From Iphione sp. A-MEVVRFRX5 (lineage: Eukaryota): DNA of 64,000 nt. The DNA lies in NCBI GenBank assembly GCA_976226885.1, contig OZ320314.1, forward strand, positions 61,256,001 to 61,320,000. The letters are read 5' to 3'. Position numbers and translations under genes: made by a program. Shown one piece after another: positions 7,829 to 51,505 of this stretch. Positions within the stretch are counted from its first letter, which is position 1. Each line of letters begins with the position of its first letter. The notes under the pieces are model-generated. The model searched no databases. It was not told the DNA's origin and saw only the letters and a program-made list of their open reading frames with translations.

Positions 7829-10747
7829 CTGAAACGCATGAAGAGTGACAAGTGAGAAAGCTGCTTCATTAACGGTCCCTGACTCCCATGTGAACGAACG
7901 TCCCCAGTCATTATAGGAATACCAGTACATTTTGCAACGTTGGTAAGTAAACCTAACTGTATGAGTCATACATATGTACATTTGTACTACTAAAAGTCAA
8001 AATCGCCCATGTATTCACTTCGTCTGCAGTAGAATAACTCCTCCTAAGCCAAAACACGCCACTAAGTTTGCATCTGTTCTTAAACTTCACACACTGAGCG
8101 ACGCGACGCTATTTGGCCACAGATTGCTGCCGGCTGAATGTAAACCTATACATTTACTAAGCGCCGATTTCTCTAGCTTCCTAAGTACATGAAGTTCTCG
8201 CACAAACTAAAAGTACATTATGTACTGAACAAAATATAAAAAAAAACCTATGTAAAAACCAGTTAGGACAAATTTAAAGCGTCTTAGGGGATCAAACGTT
8301 TGTAAAATACTGCTCAAAATAGCCACACTATCCGCCAATGTCCATCTGTAGGGCGATGCTGATGCTGGGTCGGCCTATACTAGTGGCGGTGGTTAGAGGT
8401 GCCGGCCAATATCACGCTTTGTGGGACGGCCATGCGCGGCACCCGGTCAGCACCAATGCGCAACCGCTAACGTATTGTTGGAGCACCATTCTATGCGGTG
8501 ACGTGGGCACTTTCCTTTGTCAGCGTCTTTATGTACATCTCTAAATGGCGATTTAAATAGTGGAATTCCCCCTTTGTGCAATAGAAACGTGTTCACGTTT
8601 TTAGTTCCGCACTTGCAAATCATGGCGGCTTCAGACTTATCTAATTAAGCAGCTGTTTTTCAAAGATTCTTTACACAATAGTCTAGATGTAGTTCTCATT
8701 TAGACATATTATTCGACGGAGTGTAAAGCCTATACCATTGGGATAATTACGGAGCGTTTAGTTAAAGGACGAGACTTGTCACAGAGCCTAGCCACTGAAT
8801 AATGCACACATGTTGGTAGTTCTTCATTCACTCTTACGTCATGCAATAACGACAATTCCATATAGGTGAGACGATTACCTCATCTGACTCGAAGTAACCT
8901 GGAACACCCTCATCAAATAATCACGTTTCTACCGGTAGACAGATACATGTCTGACGCTTGGCTTTCCAGAAGCGAATGATGTAGAGGTGCCTTTATTCAC
9001 AGCAAAACGGTTAAGCTCAAATCTCACCCTGGACATCAGATTATCAAAACACCAGATCGCTTCCCTCGTGGAGGCTGCTAATACTGCTAGTGTTAGAGGA
9101 GGTGAGAGTGCTCGATTTGACCTCAGTTCCTCTGACTCACTGCCAGTATGTACAAGTGCTAGGGAGGTGGTATTTCCTGAAATTCCTATACGGCATGACT
9201 CGTGACTAACCGCAACGACTGACAGAAAAACAGGACAGGAGTAACACTGATAATCCATAGGCTGGTATATTAAGGAACTTGGCAATTTGGAAAGACAAGT
9301 TTAAATATCAAAGGCCAACGATAAAGTACAAGTAGTATCATATACTCTAGGCCCAAAATTCAACGCCAGATCTTGAAGCCGTATTCTTCACCTTTGGAGT
9401 CTGACAAGTTCCCCTAATCCATTTGGCCGTTAAGTCATGTGCATCATTCCCCTTCCGCAATATTGGATCCTACTCGTTCAGAGCAGGTCACTAGCTTCCT
9501 GCCATGGCAAACACACGGCCATAAACATGCACACGCAGACAAGCACATGCGCACACATTACTTGGCCTATGTTTGCTCTCAGCTCCAGAGCGAGTCAGTG
9601 ACCAGCAGGGCGGGATGGATGAGGTCCTGTGTGGGTGAAGAGGCAAATGCGACAAAGGCCTGGGACCCCTTTCAGTACCTCTGACAATGTGAAAATCAAT
9701 ATTCTCAGGCTGGAGACAACACACAGACAGAGGCTAGACGCCATGATTATTTCATTTGCTCAGCGGGAAACATGAGAAACCTAAACCAAGTCCTAAGATA
9801 CTTCGTTTAATTGCAGTCACTGAACCGGAATCGTCTGTTTTACAACTTCAACAAGGAAATACATGTACATTGTATACCCAGCATCAAACGTACAAATGTT
9901 TTCTCGATATCAGCGCCAGTCGTGTAAACGGGACCTGGGCGCATTCTCAAAGACAACTGCTTCTAAACAATTATCCTTAATGTCTAATACTATGCTATAT
10001 GAGGGTTATACTCTTCAACTTACTGAATAAAATATACTCTTAATTTTAAGCGATTTATTTGTGCAATGCCACCGTCATTTTACGTCTTCACCTAATGCAT
10101 TTTAATGTACACTGCACCTTGATTTAACGCTGTTTAGAATCGTTCATATACACGCTGATAGATGGGGAGAAAGACAAACACATACAGATAGACAGACAGT
10201 TAGACAGACAGATAGCAGAAGGACAGATACAGATACAGACGGATTGTTGAATCAAGATTGTTAATTGAATAAAATGTTACTAGACTAAATGTAAACAAAA
10301 GTAAACCTGTACAATATGTATATCTCATTTTACTTCTCTCCATTTCCTTCTCCCTCCCTCCCGAACATCCTTTCCATCATTTCCTCTTTATTCTCTCTCC
10401 CTTACTTCCCTACTTGCTTTCTTCCGTTACTCCATCCTTCTCTTTAATGTGTCTTACTTCTTTGCCTCGTTTCAAAACCTTCATATTGACCACTTTCCTT
10501 GTCTTCTCTTCCTCCTTCTTTCTTCTTCTCCCCTCCATACTTAACCTCCCTCCCATTTGCCTCCACATTTAGATCTCTCCTCGGTACCTCTGATTTCCTT
10601 CTCTACTTATCCAGCCTCTTCCATTATTGCAAATTAAAATTCGTCCGTGATTATCACGCTCGCTCCCTTACGTCTGTTATAGTGAGTGGTAGACAGAAGA
10701 ACAGAACCTAGTAAGCAGAGTAGGGGGGGCAGGGGATGACTTTAAGT

Positions 10748-40579: not shown

Positions 40580-41459
40580 CTACATGATGCTTTTCAGATA
40601 GAATTGGCGAAAAGTGTTTTCGTCTGCCCACATGCCTCTTTTGAGGATTTCTTGGATAGGTAACCCGCCTGCAAACAGTTTAGACGCAGATGCTGCTCGG
40701 GTACTGTGGGCCGTAAAGGAGTTTGTGTCTATTCCAGCTCTAAACATCACGTCTTTGACCCAGCGTGCTAGTGTTGACGTGCTTACTGACTTGTATGGGG
40801 GCACGTAGCTGATGAACAGAGCTTTATCATCCCCTCGAATATTGACTGTACGTGACAGGTAGGTCTTGATGTGGGTTATGACACAAAGTGTGGGCTCCTG
40901 TTCGAATGGAACCAGGATTATTCTACTTGGCTGCTTGTTCGCCCTGTTGTGTTTCAGTGGTTTGGCAAAGTTGATTTGCAGCCTGTTGTTGCCCACTTCA
41001 TGGATGTTATCTAGATCTATATTGCGTATAGTTTGTAGTCGCCCACATGATGCTAAGAGGACTAGCATGGTTGTTTTAAGTGTTAATAATTTTAATGAGA
41101 TAGAGCTAGGGGGTGACCAGGTTCTGAGGAAGTCTAGCACGAGTTCCACGTCCCAAGTATGTTCTAGTCGGGCTTGCGGTGGTCGTAGGTTGAACATGCC
41201 TGCCATCACTCTGGTAGTGAGCCAATGTTGCCCGAAAGGGACCTTGTGGAATTTTTTTTGGGAATGGCGGATAATGCGCTTCGCGCTGTGTTTATGGCAC
41301 TGTAACTGAGGCCCGCTTTAAAGAGTTGGTGTAGGAACATAAGAGCCTGTTCTAATTCGGGTTTCAGTGGGTCAATCTTATGTTGGATGCAGTATGTATG
41401 CCATCTGTTTTGGTTAGTGCGTACTGTAGTCTTGTGGACTTACGCCATGAGTGCATCAT
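40580..41459 (-). pseudogene. DIRS ORF3 tyrosine recombinase with two 1-nt deletions (near 41410 and in the A8 run 41252-41259)
   Basis: N-terminal SWRKST..QY and ..FL..L...GLSYSAINTARSALS segments. Catalytic R (SCGRLQT), HxxR (AHSTRAA), W (GMW) and Y (FRQFY) are all present. Confidence 0.9.
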
Positions 41460-41506
41460 ATATCTTCTTAGTGGGTTCTTGGTTAAGGACTTGTCGATGT
41501 GCCTTT

Positions 41507-43461
41507 TTAGAAGAGTGCTGCCAATAACGGAATTGAGTTGATGTCTCTGGCGTCTGTCGTACTGTAGACGTTTAGCAGGTTTTGTGGTCTTGGTGGGAAG
41601 TGCATGGTGGCTCGTGGAGGGTTTTGGCGTAGCTTGCCATACCATCGTTGGGCTTGCCAATGTGGGACTACCACTATCGCCTTGGTCCGTTCGTGTTGGA
41701 GTTTCTGTAGGGTCCTGGAAATTAATGAAAAAGGAGGAAATGCATAAATAAATTTGAATTGTTTCCAGTTAAGGGTGAAAGCATCGATAAAGGCTGCATC
41801 GGGGTCTGGCTTCCAGCTGGCATATGTTGTTATTTGTTTGGTTGCTCTAGATGCGAAAAGGTCAACTTCTGGGGTACCCCATGCATCTGTAATGTTTTCG
41901 AACAGTTCAGGGTTGAGTTGCCATTCCGTGTCCTCGTTAAAGTGTCTCGAGAGGAAATCGGCTTCTGTGTTTTCGATGCCTGGTATGTAAGAGGCAACCG
42001 CCCAGGCTTGTCTGGCTTCTAGGAAGGCCCAGATTTTTCTGGCTAAGCGGTCACAGAGAAAAGATTTTGTACCACCTTGTTTGTTGACGTATGCTACAGC
42101 CGTGGTGTTGTCAGATCTGATCAAAAGTTCAAATGTCTGCCTTTCCGAGAAGAAGGTTTTTAGGCCTAATAAGATGGCCTTAAGTTCTAGGGCATTAATG
42201 TGCCACATCTGTTCTTCTGGTAGCCACTTCCCTCCTGCAGCCTGTGTCTGGGTAACTGCGCCCCAGCCGAGCCCTGATGCGTCTGTGGTTAATGTCTCTT
42301 TGGGTGTGTGTACTCGAATTGGTCTGAATAGAGTGGTGGCGTTAGTTAGCCACCAACGGAGGTCTTCACGACTATCCAGGGATAGTGTCATGGGTGCTTC
42401 GAAATTTTTTCCGTGACGTATCAAGGCTCGGATCTTGTCCTTTTCCAACGCTTTGTAGTGTCCTAGGCCGTATTGTGCTGCCTTTGAAAGGTCTACGAGA
42501 GTCCCTGTTAGGGAGGCGATGTGCCTGATGGAAAACTCTGTGCCCAGTAAAACGTCTTCGATTCGTGGGACAAGGTTGTCGATTTTCTTTTGAGTGGGTG
42601 TGATGGTCATGTTTGTTGAGTTCAAGTTGTAGCCTAGGAACACTATTTGTTGCGTTGGGGTTGGAGAAGATTTGTTCCAGTTTATGGTAAAGCCAAGTTC
42701 GGACATGAGGTTAGTGACTCTCTTGATCGAGGTTGAGCATGCTGTCGGTGTAGGTGCTACTATTAGCAGGTCGTCTAAGTATGCAATGACGTCATGCCCC
42801 TCTTCGTGTAAGAGGGCTAGGGGCGGTTTCAGCAATTTGGTAAATAACCTTGGGGCTGATGTTAAGCCGAAGGGCATTACAGTGTAGCGATAGGCGTGGG
42901 ACCCCCAGGTGAACGCTAGGTATTTCTGGTATTGGGGGTCTACTGCCACGGTGTGGTACGCGCTCTGTAAGTCAACAGAGGCCATCCAGCAATTTTCGTA
43001 CAGTGATTGTGTTACTGATTCGAAAGTATCCATTTTGAAATGGATGAAAGGCATGAAAGTGTTGAGAACCGACAGGTCTAAGATGATGCGGACAGAGCCG
43101 TCTGATTTAGCACGTGGGAATATGCGAGATTGAAAAGGTGAAGGTGGTTCATCGGGGACAATGACCCCCTGTTGCAGGAGATCAATGACCGCGGCATCGA
43201 TTTGTGAACTTTCATGCGGGACGAAACGGAGTGGGCGAAGGAAAGGTCTAGCAGGTGGCTGGGAAAGGAAAGTCAAGGTGATGCCCTTGACGATGTTAAG
43301 TGTGTTTTGATCGGATGTGATGTTACGCCAGGATAGAAGTTTGTGTTTGATGTTCCCAGCCACAAAGCTATCAGGACCTATTTCTTCGCCTGTCTCACCT
43401 GAAAATCCGGCTTGTCGGCTGACTGCTGGTTCTGTTTGTTGTAGCCATGGCGGTAGTCGTG
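41507..43461 (-). CDS. DIRS ORF2: reverse transcriptase - RNase H - DAM-like methyltransferase, frame intact
   Basis: RT motifs RIILDL, VDLQSAY, MPFGLTSAPRLF, YLDD. RNase H motifs TDAS..GWGA, HINALELKAI, SDNTTAVAY, ADFLSR. MT-like VDLFAS...DAF...YAFPPF...VVPHW...WY. Frame is open from about 43461; first ATG lies only inside the RT domain. Confidence 0.97.
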
Positions 43462-44524
43462 CCTAAACGTGGGGCGTTGAAAAGGGTGAAACCGGCCTCG
43501 CCCTCGTCCACCTCTGTTCCCGCGTCCTCTGCCTCGTTGTCCACGACCACGGGACCTGTCGACCTTCGTCGTCAGTTTGTTCACTGCCTCTAGGGACTTC
43601 AGAGATGTTTCGAGGTTGTCGCCGAAGAGGTGTTTATGTGACGGCGGGTGTTCGTCTGAGGCCAGCCTGCGGTACTCGGGTTTCAGGGCGAACTGGACGT
43701 CCGTGCGCCTTGCCTTGATTGTCTCCGCGTTGGACGCTCCTATCAGGGCGATCGCATGTAGAAGGGGTTTCACTGCCTTCTTTACTTCTTTGTTTCTTTG
43801 CGCTTGTTCTAGAACAATGGTTGCTCCCTGGATGAGGGCTGCCTGTCCGATTCGGAGAATGCTCTGGGCCTTCTGTAGCGCTTTCTCCCTCGACTTGAAG
43901 GGCTTGGACAGCGTCGGCCAAATCGCCTCATTCACTTTCGTGACCTGCAGGCTCTCACAGTTGACCGGAGGCAGGTAGAGGGCTCGCATGGGTTGTACCT
44001 CATCATCCTTCCACACCTTTAGTTGGTGCTCATCGACAAACTCCGCCACGTCTTTCTTTATCGCGGGTCCCTTGCGCTCCGTGGAGTAATACTCTTGTTT
44101 ATACTCCGTGAAGACATCATCGTCCGAGTCTTCCGAGATAGGATGTTCAGTTGTCCTCTTGAAAGAGCGTGTTCATCAAAGCGGCCGAGGAAGAGGCTCC
44201 TTCCTGCGTGGGATTGGTGTCTGCCGCCAATGTCGGTTCCTCTGTCTCTTCCTCGTACAGTCCTTCGAAGCCCGAATTGATTGCATCTGTGAGGGAATCG
44301 AAGTTTCCTCTGAAGTCATCGTGGAATCCGGCCATGTCTGTCCTGAACCCTGTCATCGTCTCATTCAAGGCGATTATCGCGTCCAGGACAGCAGGTGCAT
44401 CCTGGTTTGCCCGGGTTGTCCTCGGTTCAGGTTGCTTGCCCTTCTCCGCGTTGGCTTTTGAATTCCCTTTCCTTTTTGGTGCGGGTTCTTCTGTCCGATC
44501 CTGTGGAGGCTGAGGGGATGCCAT
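43378..44524 (-). pseudogene. DIRS ORF1 (gag-like), interrupted by one +1 frameshift near 44170
   Basis: ATG in ACAATGG context at 44524. MASPQPPQDRTEEP...AALM is in one frame and (K)RSFKRTTEHPISEDSDDD...KVWKDDEV...RGRGQRGRGRGNRGGRGRG...QAKK* is in the next. The RG-rich basic C-terminus is typical of DIRS gag. Confidence 0.8.
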
Positions 44525-45173
44525 TGTGGTGGGAGAGAAAGAGAGAGAGAGAGAGGGAGAGAGAGAGAGAGAGAGAGTGAGAGAGATGAGTAGTGACCAG
44601 GCTAACCACCTCTGTAAGGGTAATCCACACCGTCTTCTCAACGACTAGAAGCCGGGAGACTTGTTGGTATACCCGCACTCGCAACTGATCTAGGTCAGGG
44701 GTGCGTCTGCCAGGTTCTAACCCATGGCGGGTGAAAGCCTGCGAACACTGGGTGGGTTCTGCGCTTTCCACACACAAGCGCTCTTTGTATTAGATATGTG
44801 CGTCGGTGACAGGAGCACTACTAAGCGCACTTGTTATGAAAGTGTGGAGTGTGGCACAAAGGCCTTACAGTAGCACAAAAGGCTTGAGTTTAACCCACTG
44901 TATTTAAAAAGTAAAGGCAGTAATGTTCTCTTGAAGTTTCTTGCTTACAATGTATAAGGGTGTTGTTGTTTACAGCCTTTACAGGGTAGTTGGCTCTCCA
45001 ATTCAAGTGATTTAGTGAGATTTACAATGAATGCAGGTAAAGTGGCTCTCTTTACAATCAAATCAGGTCGAAACCGCTCTCTTTACAATAAATTCGGGGT
45101 AACTGACAATGAAATCAGGTTAGTGCTCTCTTATTCAGGGATTTATAGGAGAAAATCACCTGGAATTAGCGTA

Positions 45174-45176
<3 letters not shown>

Positions 45177-45206
<30 letters not shown>

Positions 45207-45789
45207 TCTGAACGTAATGGATGCTATGAATGCGTAGGCCAACCAGATGTGACACCTAGCCTCGTCTAAAAATTTTATTTTTACCTGTTATATCTGGCCT
45301 TACCTCACATTCATTCAGGAGAAGCTCTAGGGTATCTAAGGATCCTATATCCTCCCTTTACCCTCCATTCCACAATGGTCCTTGTGGATGTCTGGCCCCC
45401 AAACCAGACTCAACATGGGACTACCCATGTACGAACTGGGTCCTATCTAGTTTGATACACCCAGAGTGCCCAGGAACCACCAGGATCCTAGGGCACCAAA
45501 CCAAAGTTCACTGATCTTCAGTGACACCGTGTTTTAGATGCCTGAAGAGACACTAAGTCGAAACCGTGTGTGATTCTTTTAGTTTCTCTAAAAGATACAC
45601 AAACCAGACTTATAAAATACTCCATTTTATTCTGGGACTCCCATCACCATGGAGAGACTACCTCATCCATTGTGACATCATGTTGACATGGCAACGTCAC
45701 CACTTCTCCACTCCTGGCAGCCATCTTTATGGACTGACAGCCATAGCCACGGTTGCATCTTAAGGTTGGGTATTGCCTCGTTCTAAACA
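45177..45789 (-). mobile_element. 613-bp non-coding retroposed insertion nested in the DIRS 5' leader
   Basis: 16-bp direct repeats TGGAATTAGCGTAAGT at 45161-45176 and 45790-45805. T29 at 45177-45205 is a poly(A) tail on the minus strand. No credible ORF. Confidence 0.9.
45536..45760 (+). ncRNA. Type I hammerhead ribozyme with an enlarged (about 180 nt) loop 3
   Basis: Stem I AGATGC(45536-41)/GCATCT(45755-60). Core CTGAAGA (45542-48). Stem II GAC/GTC with loop ACTAA. GAAA (45560-63). Stem III ACCGTG(45563-68)/CACGGT(45748-53). Cleavage triplet GUU, predicted cut after 45754. Confidence 0.85.
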
Positions 45790-48700
45790 TGGAATTAGCG
45801 TAAGTAAACGACTTTGCTTAACAATAGCGTAGGCAGTTAGCGCACGTGGCTCGACTCTCGTTACACGCGAAAACCGTTAGAGTTCGTACGCTGCACACGT
45901 AAAAGTCGAATATTCGACCCGATAGCGTAAAAACACGTCAAAAACACGTCAAATACACGAAAAGGTTCGACTTTGCGTACGTTTAGATCGATTAGCGTAG
46001 CAATAGCGTATGTAAATGCGCAAGAAAAGGCAAAAAGTAACCGAAATGTACTTATCTGCGTGTGAGCCGCTCAAAGGGGTGACGCGAACTGAATGCGCAT
46101 GTGCGAGCTGCTTGGCGGGGACGCTATATCACCTGCTGCACTCTGGTGGAGAAGCAGCGAGGTAGAGTTTGGCGCTAGTACCTCTCTTCCCGCCCAAGTT
46201 GTACTGATGAAGACTGAAAACCTAGCTGTCCTCTAGAAATGTCATTTGATCAGAAATCACCTTTTCTCGAAAAACTAAAACACCAAATGGTTGAAATTCA
46301 AACGAATCTCGACTACGTATGAGTTGGGTTTTTGTTTGCTGCAGGAAGAAGTAATACTATGTATCAAGAGTCAAGTAGGGGCAAGGTGATATTCAGTAAC
46401 CACCTGGCTGCATGCAACTTCTACACAACCCGAAGGGTACAAGCCATTGGGTTCGGATGCTAAAAGACTATAGTCGAACACAAACATTCGGCTTCCTTTT
46501 AGGTTTTAGTTCAAAGTCTTTGTGGGAACTATCTAAGACAACGGATTAGTTCAGCTTCTCACATTTTACAGCGAAACTGGTATATATCTTACAAGTTTTC
46601 TCTTGAGAATGTAGAACATTAGTTGGTAACGGATCTTACTGACACTATGTTTTTATTCAATACACTCAGTGCTGATGGAATGTAAATGATGTGTTTAGTC
46701 TTCCGACATCTGCCAGAAATACATGCGTCCAGGTAATACACTACTGTAGCCAGAATAATTTTAACACAGTACATGTATAAGGCTGTTGGAATTGCCCTAA
46801 GGCTGCTCTGCGTGTTTAGAGATCAAAAGTTCAGCAGTTGAAGACCCGGCTTTTCTTACAAAAACGTAGAAGAAACACCTTAGATGGCACTGGAGAGTGT
46901 CAGCACAAAGAGTATTCTGGCCAGTTCTCCGCCCTGTAGCCAGAGGAAAGTCGCTTGGGCTTTCATGTGTTCATGTGGTGACCCCTCATTCTGCCGGCCA
47001 TGGTTGGATTGCCGCTCATGCATAGCCGCTCCCCGGAACTTTCCAGTGGTTGAGAACTCAACTATTCCCCTCCTACTCCTCTCATACTAAAAGTGAATAT
47101 ACATGTATATTATATGTCCTTCCTAAATGATAACCGGAACCTGAACCGTCACGACATGCCCGTGATTACTGAGTCACTACTGTTTACTACAGAAAGGAGC
47201 GTGTGGGAGAAGTATTTCTATGGGCACCAAGCAAGATGCCGCACGATGATTTATATAATCGTTAATTTGCTGAAATAGTAATTCTTGAATTTACTTAGAG
47301 CTTTTAGACGCTTTCACAGAATAATGATATTCAGGAATATACATGTAAGATAAGATGTTATTCGACGACTATTGCCCGAAATGCATCTTTATATACATAA
47401 ATCCCTATTTCACTTTGCTACTGCAGGTGAAAGACAAGTTACCAAGAAAATTATGACAAAAAGGTGACCATATTTATTTAATCAAAAACTTGGGGGAATA
47501 AAACTTAGGGGAGTATGACTGACTCATACTGGTCAAAGCGATATGGTAATACCAGAAATGAATGTTATATGTAAGAAGCTGTTCATATATAACTGGACAA
47601 AATATCCTGCTCCGTATGCGGGCATGGAGGTACCTCCTGCTGTTTCCTGATTTTAATTGATTCCATATGGTCTACAGCTTTCTCTTCACTATAGGCTCCT
47701 ATGGAAATCTGTGTCCAGGTGCGGACCTTTTCCATGTATCATGGAAAGAAATCCACACCTGTGTGCGGATGTGGAAAAATCTACCTATATGTGAACGCTA
47801 CAAGAGATATGGTAGAGCTGGGAGAAAATCCACCCCCGTGTGTGGACCTGGAACAGAAAAATCCGGTTATATGTGAACAACCCCTAAGTACAGAAACATG
47901 CATGTGGCGCCTGTGAGTTTGTTTCAAAAGCCCAGCATTCAAATCACATTGAGTTGACAATCACACCGAATACTGCGATGCCCTTTGCTTAGAAAGGAAA
48001 AGCACAGACTGTGTTCACTGCTCCATTTACGTGATGTGATCTTATAGATATATTCCTTGGGTATGACAGTAAACTGTAGAGCTCTGAATTGTCGGCACAC
48101 TGTGTCAAAGTTTCATTTAACCTAACATTCGTACTTTCCAGAGAGGTGTCATCTTCAATGAGCTGGGTGTGCGCCAACAAGAAAATTGCTTAAATTTATA
48201 CTCCTATGAAAGGAATATGACGCAGTACATTGATCCACATTCCGTCAAGTAGCTTCAGTAATTTTTCACAAGGCTGTGCTGGGCTAGAGCACTATACACA
48301 GGGTTCACCGACAAGCGTACGCGGACATAAGTGCAAAGACTACCAGTGGTTTCCACTCCTGGTCATTTCTGTGACTTATACTTTAAATAATTGTACAAAA
48401 CCATCTTCCATGTGAACTGTCTCTTTGTGTTGTTCCATGCGCCTCCGCAAGCCACGAACACGGCTTTAAAAGTAAGAAATGGAAGAATTTGTTAGGTTGT
48501 ATGATCTTGAAGGTTACTCTTCGAATAAACTTGAGGCCAACAACAGTGGAAGTGACTCAAAACACCCACTCATGCGCGTGATCCACTGACGACTATAAAA
48601 GTCTTTGTGCACGGCGATATTATAATCGTATATGATCTTGTCACTGTGACAAATATAACATTTAACAAAACAACGTCTCTAGCCAATCTTCTAAAAGTGA

Positions 48701-49109
48701 CGATAAAGATTCCTACTATCTAATGGAATTAAACAAACTGAGTATATCAACTCTATTGATACTATTCTGAATAGGATTAACAATTCTTTTCCTGTTTTTT
48801 TTTCTTTTCACACGGTGAAGTGTCAACAATACTGCCCCAATACAGGAAGTGCCGCCAAGGAACAGGGAAAATCTGTGACACGGAGTAACACATAAAAAGT
48901 CTACAACAGATTTCTCTTGATTTGCTATATATATACATTAAGGTTGGTTCGAATTGGTGAATGCTTCTTAGTAAAATTTGACTACTGCAACATCCTACAT
49001 CTTCCTCGAAACTCTTCCCGTCCCTTGCTTAATCACCCCCAGGTCCTCTTCTTTGGACAATTGCTTCACCACAATATTAGATATGTGTTATTTACCGGGG
49101 ACTTCATCA

Positions 49110-49375
49110 CTGGGAGGCTTGGACGTTGGCCATCTCTCACTTGTTTCTGATAACTGGTGTTACTAAAACTAACATTTCCTGGCTGAATATTTGTACACTT
49201 CCGTAGCTAGACCCTCTGCAAAATAATGAAACTTTTTTTTGCAATCAAAGACAAGTGAGAGGCAGATAATGACTTAATTACCAGGGAATTTATCGATCAG
49301 TGGCAGGCTTGCACGTTGGCCATCTCTCATTTGTTTCTGATAACTGGTGTTACTCAAACACTAACATTTCCTAAC
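49110..49375. repeat. ~70-bp local direct duplication
   Basis: ggaggcttggacgttggccatctctca...aacatttcct occurs at about 49112 and again at about 49302. Confidence 0.7.
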
Positions 49376-51505
49376 TTTACTGACCCTAATGTGACCAACG
49401 ATGAGACCATCGAGGATGCCACGGGCTCTACCACCACCAGCAATGCTATCTTTGCTCCTCCGCCTGCCCCAGTGTCTTGCCAGTTAGGCTCTGCTACAGG
49501 CCAGCAACTACCCTAGAACATTGAGCAGCGAGTGATCCAGGCCATCTTACAGGACATTAAGCAAGGATTTTTACAATGACATCATTTTGATGCTTTTCCT
49601 TAATTTCAGATATTAAAAGGCCAGTATGTTTCTAGTTATACCTGTGATATATGTATTCTATTCCAGATGTTGACTTTTGCCATGAAGGACTGTGATATAT
49701 AATGTGATATTAACTAAGATCACCTGTGATTACTCCAGCCTTGGAGTATTTATCCCCGGTGTTACATGTTATTTTTAAAATAATAATCCTACTTTTGTCG
49801 TCTTTTTATTGACCACTTGATTTTTTCACTGTTAAATATTTAATCCTTTTTTTATGAACACCAGTATATGATCTACATACGTTACAGACATTTATCCATT
49901 ATTAACCACTGAGGGACTGCAGAATCATTCATTGCCACACTGACATTGGCCACCTGATTGGTTGCCATACTTATTCAGTTTAACAACAGTGTAGTATATA
50001 AGGAGGAGTTGCAAACGGTTGTGTTCATTATCCAATCACCCGAAGAAGAGACCTACATGTGTCCGGAAAGCTTGTGATAATACAAAACGATACTAAGACA
50101 CTCCATGACATATTTTATTACTATTATCAGACCATGTATACTTTCCAAAATGCTCGGTAATGAAACAAACGAAATTACATATGGCAAACAACTTGTTAGC
50201 TAGACTTACTAACCCATATTAATCATATTAACTGACATTTGAGGCAGGCCATCTGGATAACAGCCCTTTGGGTCGATGATGAGTTCTGTTGAAAGTTAGA
50301 AAAAAAAATCTTTAACTACTGTTTATATAGTTGGAACTGTTGGACACTAAAGCCTAAGAAACCATTCGTCATGAGTTCCCAGCCTCTTTTATTCATTATT
50401 TAACTTTGAAATTGTCCACTTCCTTAGCTACACACTTTGCTTAATAGTGAAAAGTTTTTTTTCAATCAAAGACAAGTTAGAGACAGATAATGACTTAGCC
50501 TCCCAGGCCATGGTTTAACTGGACCGGCTGCCACATCTAATCTCAGCACACTTGAAAATGACAGCAGGCTACTAACACGAAGCAAAGCCAACCAGTCTCG
50601 ATGCTATNNNNNNNNNNNNNNNNNNNNNNNNNNNNNNNNNNNNNNNNNNNNNNNNNNNNNNNNNNNNNNNNNNNNNNNNNNNNNNNNNNNNNNNNNNNNN
50701 NNNNNNNNNNNNNNNNNNNNNNNNNNNNNNNNNNNNNNNNNNNNCCTGGATACTCAGTCCTGACTATACATTTTTCAAATGTAAAATGAAGGATTACAGC
50801 ATCGATGGGTAATTTGTAAGATATTAATATTCATAATGGGATCTAACTTCTTGCTGCTGTGTGTTCGTAAGAGGAGACTGTGTATATTTAAAAACTGTTT
50901 CTAATTTCTAGACAATTAATCTGAACTCTACTATAAGGTAGACAAGGGGTTGCTCATTGAGTGGGTGCCAGCAGGTTTTATCAAATTTCAAAGGATAATA
51001 TACCCCTAGAGTTGGTATTTGAAGAATACCAACGTTAGTACTTAGTAGAAGATGAATGCTGGCGATCTGAAAAATGTATAGAAAAATACACCAATTTCAC
51101 CTCTTGTCATTTGTAGACCTGAAAAAACTTCTACTATAACTTATCTCAATCATAAGCGTATAAAAATATTCTATATTCATGGTATGAGTACACTTTAGGG
51201 TCTGTATCATCTCTTATGGAAAAATGGTTTCTAAATCCATAGCCGACTGTACATGAATGCATGAGACATCTACACGAAGGGCCAACTCATCAGCTCAAGA
51301 AAAGTTCTGATAGAGCACGGCACCGACAGAAATCTGACATGTACAGATACATCGACATTAAGTCCTAGGAAGGAGTATTGACATTCATCCTTTTATTGTA
51401 TTATGAGTGATTTAAATTCTAGCATTATAGACCAACGTTGTTGAGTGACGCCCACTACTTCAAGTTAGCAGTTCATGGTCAGTTACACTGGGCTCACGTA
51501 CATAA

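What the first reader, a model, noticed from the sequence alone, without database searches (positions are those of the whole stretch)
45240..45747. The whole insertion is a dense string of hairpins
Seen in sequence, consecutive stems upstream of the ribozyme: CCAGAT/ATCTGG (45243-97), TCCACAA/TTGTGGA (45369-88), GTCTGG/CCAGAC (45390-409), ACATGGG/CCCATGT (45413-30), AACTGG/CTAGTT with G-U pairs (45434-52), GTGCCC/GGGCAC (45466-96) and TCACTGA/TCAGTGA (45508-24). Inside ribozyme loop 3: TCTTTTAG/CTAAAAGA (45575-95), CCAGA+ATAAAAT/ATTTTAT+TCTGG (45604-35), CCAT/ATGG (45641-52), GTGAC/GTCAC (45672-700) and CAG+CCAT/ATGG+CTG (45718-36). Back-to-back 6-8 bp hairpins with 2-10 nt linkers suggest selection on RNA structure. 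The fold is branched rather than rod-like. Inference: a protein-binding or RT-recruiting scaffold.
Basis: partly seen in the sequence, partly recalled or inferred. Interest (0 to 1): 0.7.

Follow-up and report, generated by a model that had tools for sequence, protein, structure and literature searches.

The report
Hairpin-rich tail of Penelope retroelement
The string of hairpins is real and evolutionarily conserved, and it is the folded, non-coding 3' tail of a Penelope-like jumping gene that also carries a self-cutting hammerhead RNA, so it is a well-structured variant of a known kind of element and not a new kind of system.

Summary
The hairpin density is far above chance: 7 perfect local hairpins of at least 6 bp against 0.9±0.9 in shuffles, and folding z = -7.2 on the + strand and -5.9 on the - strand.

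The "insertion" (45177-45789, 16-bp target duplications) is a 5'-truncated copy of a Penelope-like element (PLE). It holds a T30 run, the last 31 nt of ORF2 and a 552-nt 3' UTR. It is 100% identical to the end of a full-length copy on another contig, which has ORF1 plus an ORF2 with RT and GIY-YIG domains.

Alignments of 21-37 paralogous copies (72-89% identical) show the hairpins are kept through compensatory changes. This is clearest for R1, R2, R4, R6, R7 and L3b/c. One conserved hairpin (45329-45364) was missed.

The hammerhead-active fold lies 3 kcal/mol above the minimum free energy. Selection on RNA structure is supported. The "RT-recruiting or protein-binding scaffold" idea is plausible by analogy with published PLE biochemistry but is untested here, because no RNA runs were available.

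That family's terminal repeat is not unusually structured (z = +0.5).

The parts
45161..45176 (+). Left target-site duplication, TGGAATTAGCGTAAGT
   Evidence: Identical 16-mer at 45790-45805.
45177..45206 (+). T30 run at the 5' junction. It is not part of the source element.
   Evidence: The full-length copy L001/L031 has ORF2 sequence here instead. T-runs also sit at the 5' junction of other truncated copies.
45207..45237 (+). Last 31 nt of PLE ORF2, including the stop codon TAG at 45235-45237
   Evidence: 100% identical to L031:8893-8923, the end of the 840-aa RT/GIY-YIG ORF.
45243..45297 (+). Hairpin R1. It extends to 12 bp (45243-54 / 45286-97) and encloses an A/U hairpin (45267-73 / 45277-83).
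   Evidence: 84% of cells are paired and 7 of 12 pairs changed on both sides in 11 copies.
45318..45324 (+). Invariant GGAGAAG motif, complementary to the invariant CUUCUCC at 45703-45709
   Evidence: Invariant in A1. RNAalifold pairs the two motifs. There is no covariation, and a 7-mer match among conserved blocks is not unlikely by chance.
45329..45364 (+).
   Evidence: Minimum-free-energy fold. 66-79% paired with double changes. Present with different stem sequences in diverged copies.
45369..45388 (+). Hairpin R2, UCCACAA/UUGUGGA
   Evidence: 92.6% paired and 6 of 7 pairs changed on both sides in 33 copies. Stem variants include CUCACAA/UUGUGAG, CCCAC/GUGGG, UCCCCA/UGGGGA and CCCCUGA/UCAGGGG.
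45390..45409 (+). Hairpin R3, GUCUGG/CCAGAC. The 3' strand ACCAGAC is nearly invariant.
   Evidence: 75.5% paired. The 5' strand varies and the 3' strand is conserved in sequence.
45413..45430 (+). Hairpin R4, ACAUGGG/CCCAUGU, with a conserved ACUA loop
   Evidence: 88.8% paired and 5 of 7 pairs changed on both sides. A weak chance resemblance to the MS2 operator in Rfam: E = 0.38, 20 bits against a gathering score of 40.
45436..45464 (+).
Evidence: The inner stem is 89% paired, with pair types AU:14, GC:5, UG:2.
45466..45496 (+). Hairpin R6, GUGCCC/GGGCAC, with inner AGGA/UCCU
   Evidence: 64-73% paired, and 3-7 pairs changed on both sides.
45508..45524 (+). Hairpin R7, UCACUGA/UCAGUGA
   Evidence: 95% paired in 37 copies. 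One pair is GC:27 / AU:6.
45536..45568 (+). Hammerhead 5' half: helix I 5' strand AGAUGC (45536-41), core CUGAAGA (45542-48), helix II GAC-ACUAA-GUC (45549-59), GAAA (45560-63), helix III 5' strand ACCGUG (45563-68)
   Evidence: The pattern hit is unique in the window. The core is intact in 25 of 33 loci. Position N7 varies between A and U only.
45569..45747 (+). 179-nt branched domain inside helix III. It contains L3a (45569-72/45598-601 and 45575-82/45588-95), L3b/c (45604-08/45631-35 and 45612-18/45624-30), Hc (45644-47/45672-75 and 45649-53/45666-70), Hd (45680-85/45692-97), the CUUCUCC motif (45703-09) and He (45714-16/45738-40, 45718-24/45729-36).
   Evidence: The constrained consensus fold has 92.9% paired cells in 37 copies. 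Covariation is seen in L3b (CG:13 / GC:12) and Hc (GC:24 / AU:8). 45670-45745 is nearly invariant.
45748..45760 (+). Hammerhead 3' half: helix III 3' strand CACGGU (45748-53), H17 = U45754 with predicted cleavage after it, and helix I 3' strand GCAUCU (45755-60)
   Evidence: H17 is U or A, never G. Helix I shows a compensatory difference (A-U versus G-C) in another PLE family, L056.
45761..45789 (+). 3' terminal tail with a small conserved hairpin GGGU/GCCU (45768-71/45775-78) and the fixed element end ...CUAAACA
   Evidence: All copies end here and are followed directly by their target duplication.
45790..45805 (+). Right target-site duplication

Best explanation
The 45240-45747 stretch is most of the 3' UTR of a Penelope-like retroelement (PLE), the unit that forms the pseudo-LTR. 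It was inserted here as a 5'-truncated, target-duplication-flanked copy in + orientation.

Shown: the + strand RNA of this UTR is a conserved multi-hairpin structure. It has about nine upstream hairpins (R1, R1b, R2-R7), followed by a type-I hammerhead ribozyme whose helix III encloses a 179-nt five-way branched domain. After the predicted cleavage site comes a 35-nt tail ending in a small hairpin.

Inferred: the loop-3 hairpins hold the two distant halves of the hammerhead together so that it can fold as a monomer. The near-invariant blocks around the cleavage site and 3' end (45670-45789), together with the upstream hairpin array, probably form the cis-acting RNP platform. The element's own RT/endonuclease, and possibly its basic ORF1 protein, would recognise this platform before target-primed reverse transcription starts at the fixed ...CUAAACA end.
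For: Identity of the element:
- The 585-nt insert is 100% identical to the end of a full-length copy on C22.
- A related element, L055, shows pLTR-ORF1-ORF2-pLTR with 98.9% identical pLTRs.
- Copies have a fixed 3' end, variable 5' ends and 14-18-bp target duplications.

Structure:
- Folding z = -7.2 / -5.9.
- Hairpin count is 7 against 0.9 in shuffles.
- The upstream 270 nt of 12 diverged copies all have z between -2.8 and -5.1.
- In a structure-guided alignment of 33 copies, R2-R4 are 86% paired against 35-39% in slid controls. 15 of 20 pairs changed on both sides against 5.2±1.2 in shuffles, 0 of 500.
- R1, R1b, the alternative R5 and R6 are 74% paired against 35-46%, with 68 double-change cells against 12-26.
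- The hammerhead domain consensus is 92.9% paired.

Hammerhead:
- The core is conserved. N7 and H17 vary only within the allowed letters.
- The active fold is 3.0 kcal/mol above the minimum free energy, and helix III is already in the unconstrained minimum-free-energy fold.
- Helix I shows a compensatory difference in another PLE family.

Function by analogy: in the Anolis PLE, RT binds and initiates internally just downstream of the hammerhead, and hammerhead cleavage is protein-assisted (PMC11167929).
Against: - No RNA data were obtainable, so expression, the RNA strand and cleavage at 45754/45755 are unobserved.
- Folding z-scores and G-U against A-C counts do not separate the two strands. 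The strand assignment rests on ORF orientation, the ribozyme and the fixed 3' end.
- Most copies are decaying paralogues. The 'compensatory' changes in hammerhead helix III sit at two paired CpGs and are no more frequent than chance: 2 of 3 double decays are compensated.
- The most conserved blocks are invariant, so they carry no covariation signal.
- R3's 3' strand is conserved in sequence while its partner is not.
- Nothing here shows protein binding.
- Another PLE family in the same genome transposes with an unstructured pLTR (z = +0.5), so a hairpin array is not a general PLE requirement.
Confidence: 0.8

Rival explanations
1. The hairpins mainly regulate the ribozyme and do not recruit RT. 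Mutually exclusive pairings would switch the hammerhead between inactive and active folds, possibly triggered by protein binding. The candidates are CCGUGUGUGAU (45564-74) with the consensus GUCACCAUGG at 45643-53 (the window has A at 45643); GUGAC (45672-76) with either GUCAC; and helix III itself.
For: Unconstrained RNAalifold on 21 copies pairs the helix III 5' strand with 45643-53 (10 bp, conserved in all copies) instead of forming helix III. The active fold is near but not at the minimum free energy. The Anolis PLE hammerhead needs protein to cleave (PMC11167929).
Against: All strands involved are nearly invariant, so no covariation discriminates the alternatives. On 37 copies the hammerhead-constrained consensus is as good as the unconstrained one. 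This does not explain the nine upstream hairpins.
Confidence: 0.2
2. The 520-585-nt unit is a separate non-autonomous element, like a retrozyme or SINE, that borrows the PLE machinery. On this view it is not simply a truncated PLE, and its hairpins are what makes it a good parasite.
For: At least 15 independent copies from several subfamilies begin at the same A/U-rich tract (query positions about 56-80) and consist of the 3' UTR only. Animal retrozymes are reported to derive from PLE pLTRs (bioRxiv 10.64898/2026.07.22.740005).
Against: The window copy starts elsewhere. It includes 31 nt of ORF2 coding sequence and is 100% identical to the full-length copy. No tandem arrays were seen among about 100 candidate copies. 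The upstream pLTR of the full-length L055 starts at the same tract, so that start point looks like a truncation or second-strand hot spot of the PLE itself.
Confidence: 0.12
3. The insert is an antisense, polyadenylated transcript retroposed by a LINE. The poly-T would then be a poly(A) tail on the - strand, and the + strand hairpins and ribozyme would be passengers.
For: T30 directly follows the left target duplication. Folding is also significant on the - strand.
Against: The fixed end coincides exactly with the 3' end of full-length PLEs, and the variable end is the 5' side of the + strand. There is no polyadenylation signal upstream of the A30 on the - strand of the window copy (sequence). 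Target sites do not resemble TT|AAAA. ORFs, ribozyme and pLTR arrangement are all on the + strand.
Confidence: 0.04
4. The hairpins have no function. They would be chance, or DNA-level palindromes left by the insertion mechanism.
For: The z-scores are symmetric between strands. Many counted substitutions are private decay of dead copies.
Against: Stems at the same positions are kept with different sequences across subfamilies. The measures that count pairs or pair types exceed all 500 shuffles. Twelve diverged copies remain significantly structured.
Confidence: 0.04

Closest known systems
Pseudo-LTRs / 3' UTRs of Penelope-like elements with hammerhead ribozymes (Cervera & de la Pena 2014, PMC4209133; Craig et al. 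2021, PMC8557442; Frangieh et al. 2024, PMC11167929)
   Same: RT plus a C-terminal GIY-YIG ORF. A hammerhead near the 3' end, in the terminal repeat. A partial-tandem pLTR-ORF-pLTR arrangement (L055). 5' truncation and variable target duplications. The element end lies a few tens of nt downstream of the ribozyme, where RT starts in the Anolis element.
   Different: Published metazoan PLE hammerheads are minimal, with a 0-2-bp helix III thought to act as dimers. Here a 6-bp helix III closes a 179-nt conserved branched domain, and about 300 nt of further conserved hairpins lie upstream. There is a large ORF1. T-runs sit at the 5' junctions.
Metazoan non-LTR retrozymes (Cervera & de la Pena 2020, PMC7229834; Li et al. 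2026 bioRxiv 10.64898/2026.07.22.740005)
   Same: A few-hundred-nt non-coding unit with a type-I hammerhead and strong self-complementarity, related to PLE pLTRs.
   Different: Retrozymes are tandem arrays that give circular RNAs. Here the copies are dispersed and single, with target duplications. The extra sequence sits inside helix III and not between ribozymes.
Structured 3' UTRs of non-LTR retrotransposons recognised by their RT (the R2 3' UTR and stringent-type LINE 3' stem-loops; from my own knowledge, not checked here)
   Same: A folded 3' UTR at the point where target-primed reverse transcription begins. 5'-truncated copies keep it.
   Different: A different RT clade and endonuclease. 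No ribozyme at the 3' end in those elements. Binding is not shown here.
Discontinuous hammerheads in rodent Clec2 3' UTRs (Martick et al. 2008; from my own knowledge)
   Same: The two halves of a hammerhead are separated by a long intervening sequence.
   Different: It lies in a host mRNA and not in a retroelement.

Membership tests
Penelope-like element (EN+ PLE) | Reverse transcriptase domain in the main ORF | tested here: met
   RVT_1 at 36.6-36.8 bits (cut-off 29.6) in L031 ORF2 and L055 ORF2.
Penelope-like element (EN+ PLE) | GIY-YIG endonuclease C-terminal to the RT, with Cys/His zinc-finger-like motifs | tested here: inconclusive
   The Pfam GIY-YIG hit is at 19.8-20 bits, below the 22.6 cut-off, in both elements at aa 736-776. 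The translation shows NLIYCITCTRCKQQYVGQT...H...HH. Position and motif fit, but the score is sub-threshold.
Penelope-like element (EN+ PLE) | Pseudo-LTRs from partial tandem copies | tested here: met
   L055 has 540-nt repeats, 98.9% identical, flanking ORF1-ORF2. The C22 source copy has no upstream repeat within 9 kb.
Penelope-like element (EN+ PLE) | Hammerhead motif in the terminal repeat | tested here: met
Hammerhead ribozyme, type I | Core CUGANGA ... GAAA ... with H17 not G, in type-I order | tested here: met
   45542-48, 45560-63, U45754. Across 37 copies N7 is A or U and H17 is U or A.
Hammerhead ribozyme, type I | Helices I, II and III supported by pairing and covariation | tested here: inconclusive
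   The helices are 92-97% paired. Helix I differs by a compensatory pair in PLE family L056. Helix III changes are at CpGs and do not exceed chance.
Hammerhead ribozyme, type I | Match to the Rfam hammerhead covariance models | tested here: not met
   No hammerhead hit at E up to 1 in 40000-51000. This is expected, because 179 nt interrupt helix III.
Hammerhead ribozyme, type I | Self-cleavage | not testable with these tools
   No RNA runs were listed. An in vitro assay is needed.
Non-LTR retrozyme | Tandem head-to-tail arrays of the ribozyme unit | tested here: not met
   Genome hits are dispersed single units with target duplications.
Non-LTR retrozyme | Circular RNA product | not testable with these tools
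   No RNA data.

The most novel reading that the evidence does not exclude
In this PLE lineage the hammerhead has become a monomeric, protein-gated ribozyme. A conserved 179-nt five-way junction inside helix III, plus the upstream hairpin array, would form one RNP platform, possibly closed by the invariant GGAGAAG/CUUCUCC long-range pair. This platform would bind the element's RT/EN and ORF1 protein. It would couple RNA recognition, ribozyme activation and initiation of reverse transcription 35 nt downstream. The same platform would allow 3'-UTR-only units of about 520 nt to be mobilised as a discrete class.
Probability: 0.15. Interest if true: 0.65.

Novelty: new variant of a known kind. Interest (0 to 1): 0.4.

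Why it matters
How Penelope-like elements recognise their RNA and what their hammerheads do is still open. The only biochemistry (Anolis PAc) points to an RNA element next to the ribozyme and to protein-assisted cleavage. This family offers a large, covariation-supported RNA structure around a monomer-capable split hammerhead. It also has an apparently intact full-length copy and a very recent insertion, which makes it a convenient natural system for mapping RT-binding and ribozyme-control elements. It is also a reminder that hammerhead descriptors and Rfam models miss ribozymes with long helix III inserts.

Tried and rejected
- Rfam scan of 40000-51000 at E up to 1: only a sub-threshold MS2-operator look-alike on hairpin R4, and no hammerhead model hit.
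- RNA evidence: the look-up of sequencing runs listed no RNA run. Expression, strand and cleavage ends could not be checked.
- Strand assignment from G-U against A-C mismatches: uninformative. Counts were 104 vs 97, 140 vs 85 on a + strand-derived structure, and 14 vs 47 where R3 is misaligned.
- Helix III covariation: rejected as evidence, because both variable pairs are paired CpGs that decay in dead copies.
- GGAGAAG/CUUCUCC long-range pairing: both motifs are invariant with no covariation, and my estimate is about 0.7 complementary 7-mer pairs expected by chance among roughly 150 conserved positions. It is kept only as a lead.
- First z-score script timed out. It was repeated on the 270-nt upstream parts.
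- MAFFT misaligns R3 in one subfamily, and the covariance-model alignment did not fully fix this.
- The 10-nt GTCGAAACCG match in the 31-bp minisatellite at 45021-45093 was judged to be chance.
- I considered and rejected reading the insert as a LINE-retroposed antisense transcript (see rivals).
- Organism identity could not be determined with the tools and was not needed.

Full report
**Observation.**
- The 585-nt insert (45207-45791) folds at -191.2 kcal/mol, against -142.7±6.7 for dinucleotide shuffles (z = -7.21). The reverse strand gives z = -5.94.
- A simple count finds 7 perfect local hairpins (stem of at least 6 bp, loop 3-10 nt) in 45240-45747. Two thousand shuffles give 0.92±0.93, never 7.
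- This is the top value among 242 tiles of the 64-kb window.
- The fold is multibranched.

**What the insertion is.** The sequence is flanked by a 16-bp target duplication (45161-76 and 45790-805). It begins with T30.
- The following 585 nt are 100% identical to a locus on contig C22. That locus continues upstream into two overlapping ORFs.
- ORF1 is 565 aa and has no Pfam family. [quoted passage not shown]
- This is the architecture of an endonuclease-positive Penelope-like element (PLE).
- A related copy, L055, shows the classic arrangement pLTR (540 nt) - ORF1 - ORF2 - pLTR, with 98.9% identical repeats.
- About 100 candidate copies exist in the 1.18-Gb genome. They share a fixed 3' end (...CUAAACA), have variable 5' ends and carry 14-18-bp target duplications.
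- These features, with the ORFs and the ribozyme, define + as the sense strand.

**Hammerhead.**
- Layout in 5'-to-3' order:
  - Helix I: AGAUGC / GCAUCU.
  - Core: CUGAAGA.
  - Helix II: GAC / GUC.
  - GAAA.
  - Helix III: ACCGUG (45563-68) / CACGGU (45748-53).
  - H17: U45754.
- This forms a type-I hammerhead with 179 nt inside helix III.
- The core is intact in most copies.
- The only variation at N7 (A/U) and H17 (U/A) is of the allowed kind.
- The unconstrained minimum-free-energy fold of 45504-45790 already contains helix III. The fully constrained active fold is 3.0 kcal/mol higher.
- Helix III 'compensatory' changes fall on two paired CpGs in decaying copies, so I do not count them as evidence.
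Its core is 91% identical and its hammerhead is split by 137 nt. Its helix I is GGUGC/GCACC, a compensatory difference from the helix I here.
- Rfam finds no hammerhead here, as expected with such an insert.

**Are the hairpins selected?** I aligned 21 copies of the whole UTR (A1, 72-85% identity) and 37 copies of the ribozyme domain (A2).

| Structure tested | Copies | Cells paired | Slid controls | Double changes |
|---|---|---|---|---|
| R2-R4, covariance-model alignment | 33 | 86% | 35-39% | 15 of 20 pairs vs 5.2±1.2 in shuffles; 0 of 500 shuffles reach it, also for pair types |
| R1 (12 bp), R1b, alternative R5, R6 | 21 | 74% | 35-46% | 21 pairs vs 15.1 in shuffles |
| Ribozyme domain, consensus structure | 37 | 92.9% | 33-43% | clear in R7, L3b and Hc |

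- R2 occurs as UCCACAA/UUGUGGA, CUCACAA/UUGUGAG, CCCAC/GUGGG, UCCCCA/UGGGGA and CCCCUGA/UCAGGGG.
- R4 keeps its ACUA loop while its stem changes.
- Twelve diverged copies keep z between -2.8 and -5.1 for the upstream 270 nt.
- Caveat on the A5 alignment: it is fitted to the model structure.
- Caveat on independence: the copies are paralogues and not independent lineages.
L3d is mostly G-U and is replaced by hairpin Hc at 45644-75. L3e competes with Hc.
- R3 behaves differently. Its 3' strand ACCAGAC is conserved in sequence while its partner strand drifts.
- The segment 45670-45745 and the 3' tail are almost invariant across subfamilies that differ by more than 20% elsewhere. This is sequence-level constraint, which covariation cannot probe.

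**Mechanism.**
- Shown: this is a conserved, hairpin-dense RNA at the 3' end of a PLE, with a hammerhead whose halves are bridged by a folded domain.
- Inferred, loop 3: the loop-3 junction lets the ribozyme fold as a monomer. Published metazoan PLE hammerheads have almost no helix III and are thought to need dimers (PMC4209133).
- Inferred, RNP platform: the invariant blocks and the tail hairpin next to the fixed 3' end probably form the binding and initiation site for the element's RT/EN. The Anolis PLE initiates internally just downstream of its hammerhead, binds RNA there, and its ribozyme cleaves only with protein present (PMC11167929).
- The basic C-terminal tail of ORF1 makes it a further candidate binder.
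- Cleavage at U45754 would detach the last 35 nt, so it should be incompatible with priming of the same molecule. This fits a regulated ribozyme.
- A hairpin array is not a general PLE need: the other family's pLTR has z = +0.5.

**Limits.** No RNA run was listed. Strand tests by wobble counts were uninformative.

**Novelty.** PLEs with hammerhead-bearing terminal repeats are known. The large conserved hairpin array and the long structured helix III insert are a variant that I did not find described in the papers read. My score for interest is moderate.

Noticed in passing
window 45177-45206; L005, L007, L011, L013 (5' junctions); L055:880-900: Homopolymer T-runs (about 9-30 nt) sit between the left target duplication and the 5' end of independently inserted truncated copies of this PLE family. 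This includes the upstream pLTR of a full-length element. They are not in the target or the source, so they are added during integration. Possible sources are untemplated or poly(A)-templated top-strand extension. This resolves the apparent 'poly(A) on the other strand' paradox in favour of the + strand element.
   Followed up: partly
window 45262-45285 (A/U tract AAAAAUUUUAUUUUUAC) and the equivalent site in L004-L014, L022, L027, L035, L044, L047-L050, L055: At least 15 copies from several subfamilies start at this same A/U-rich tract, giving units of about 520 nt. This is a 5'-truncation or second-strand-priming hot spot, or a discrete non-autonomous unit.
   Followed up: partly
L031:4665-9476 (G000:C22, about 60442665-60447476): A full-length copy with both ORFs open, whose 3' 585 nt are 100% identical to the window insert. 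This implies a very recent insertion. No upstream pLTR was found within 9 kb.
   Followed up: partly
L031:4710-6407 and L055:1481-3220: ORF1 is 565-579 aa with no Pfam match. It has a disordered Pro/Thr/Ser-rich N-terminus, a helical middle and a very basic Lys/Gly/Pro tail. ORF2 overlaps it by 7 nt in the -1 frame with no nearby ATG, which suggests frameshifting or coupling.
   Followed up: no
window 45318-45324 and 45703-45709: The invariant complementary heptamers GGAGAAG and CUUCUCC lie 385 nt apart in the families examined. RNAalifold pairs them, which would close the whole hairpin array into one domain. There is no covariation, and the match could be chance.
   Followed up: partly
L056:4177-4482 and 9032-9311 (G000:C2, about 49.24 Mb): A different PLE family has 280-nt pLTRs and a hammerhead split by 137 nt. 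Its pLTR is not unusually structured (z = +0.5), and the upstream copy is preceded by A33 on the + strand.
   Followed up: partly
window 45021-45093: A 31-bp minisatellite (2.4 copies) just upstream of the insertion contains GTCGAAACCG, a 10-nt match to the hammerhead core region. I judged this coincidental.
   Followed up: partly
window 45406-45430: Hairpin R4 gives a sub-threshold Rfam hit to the MS2 operator hairpin (20.3 bits against a gathering score of 40). This is a chance resemblance.
   Followed up: yes
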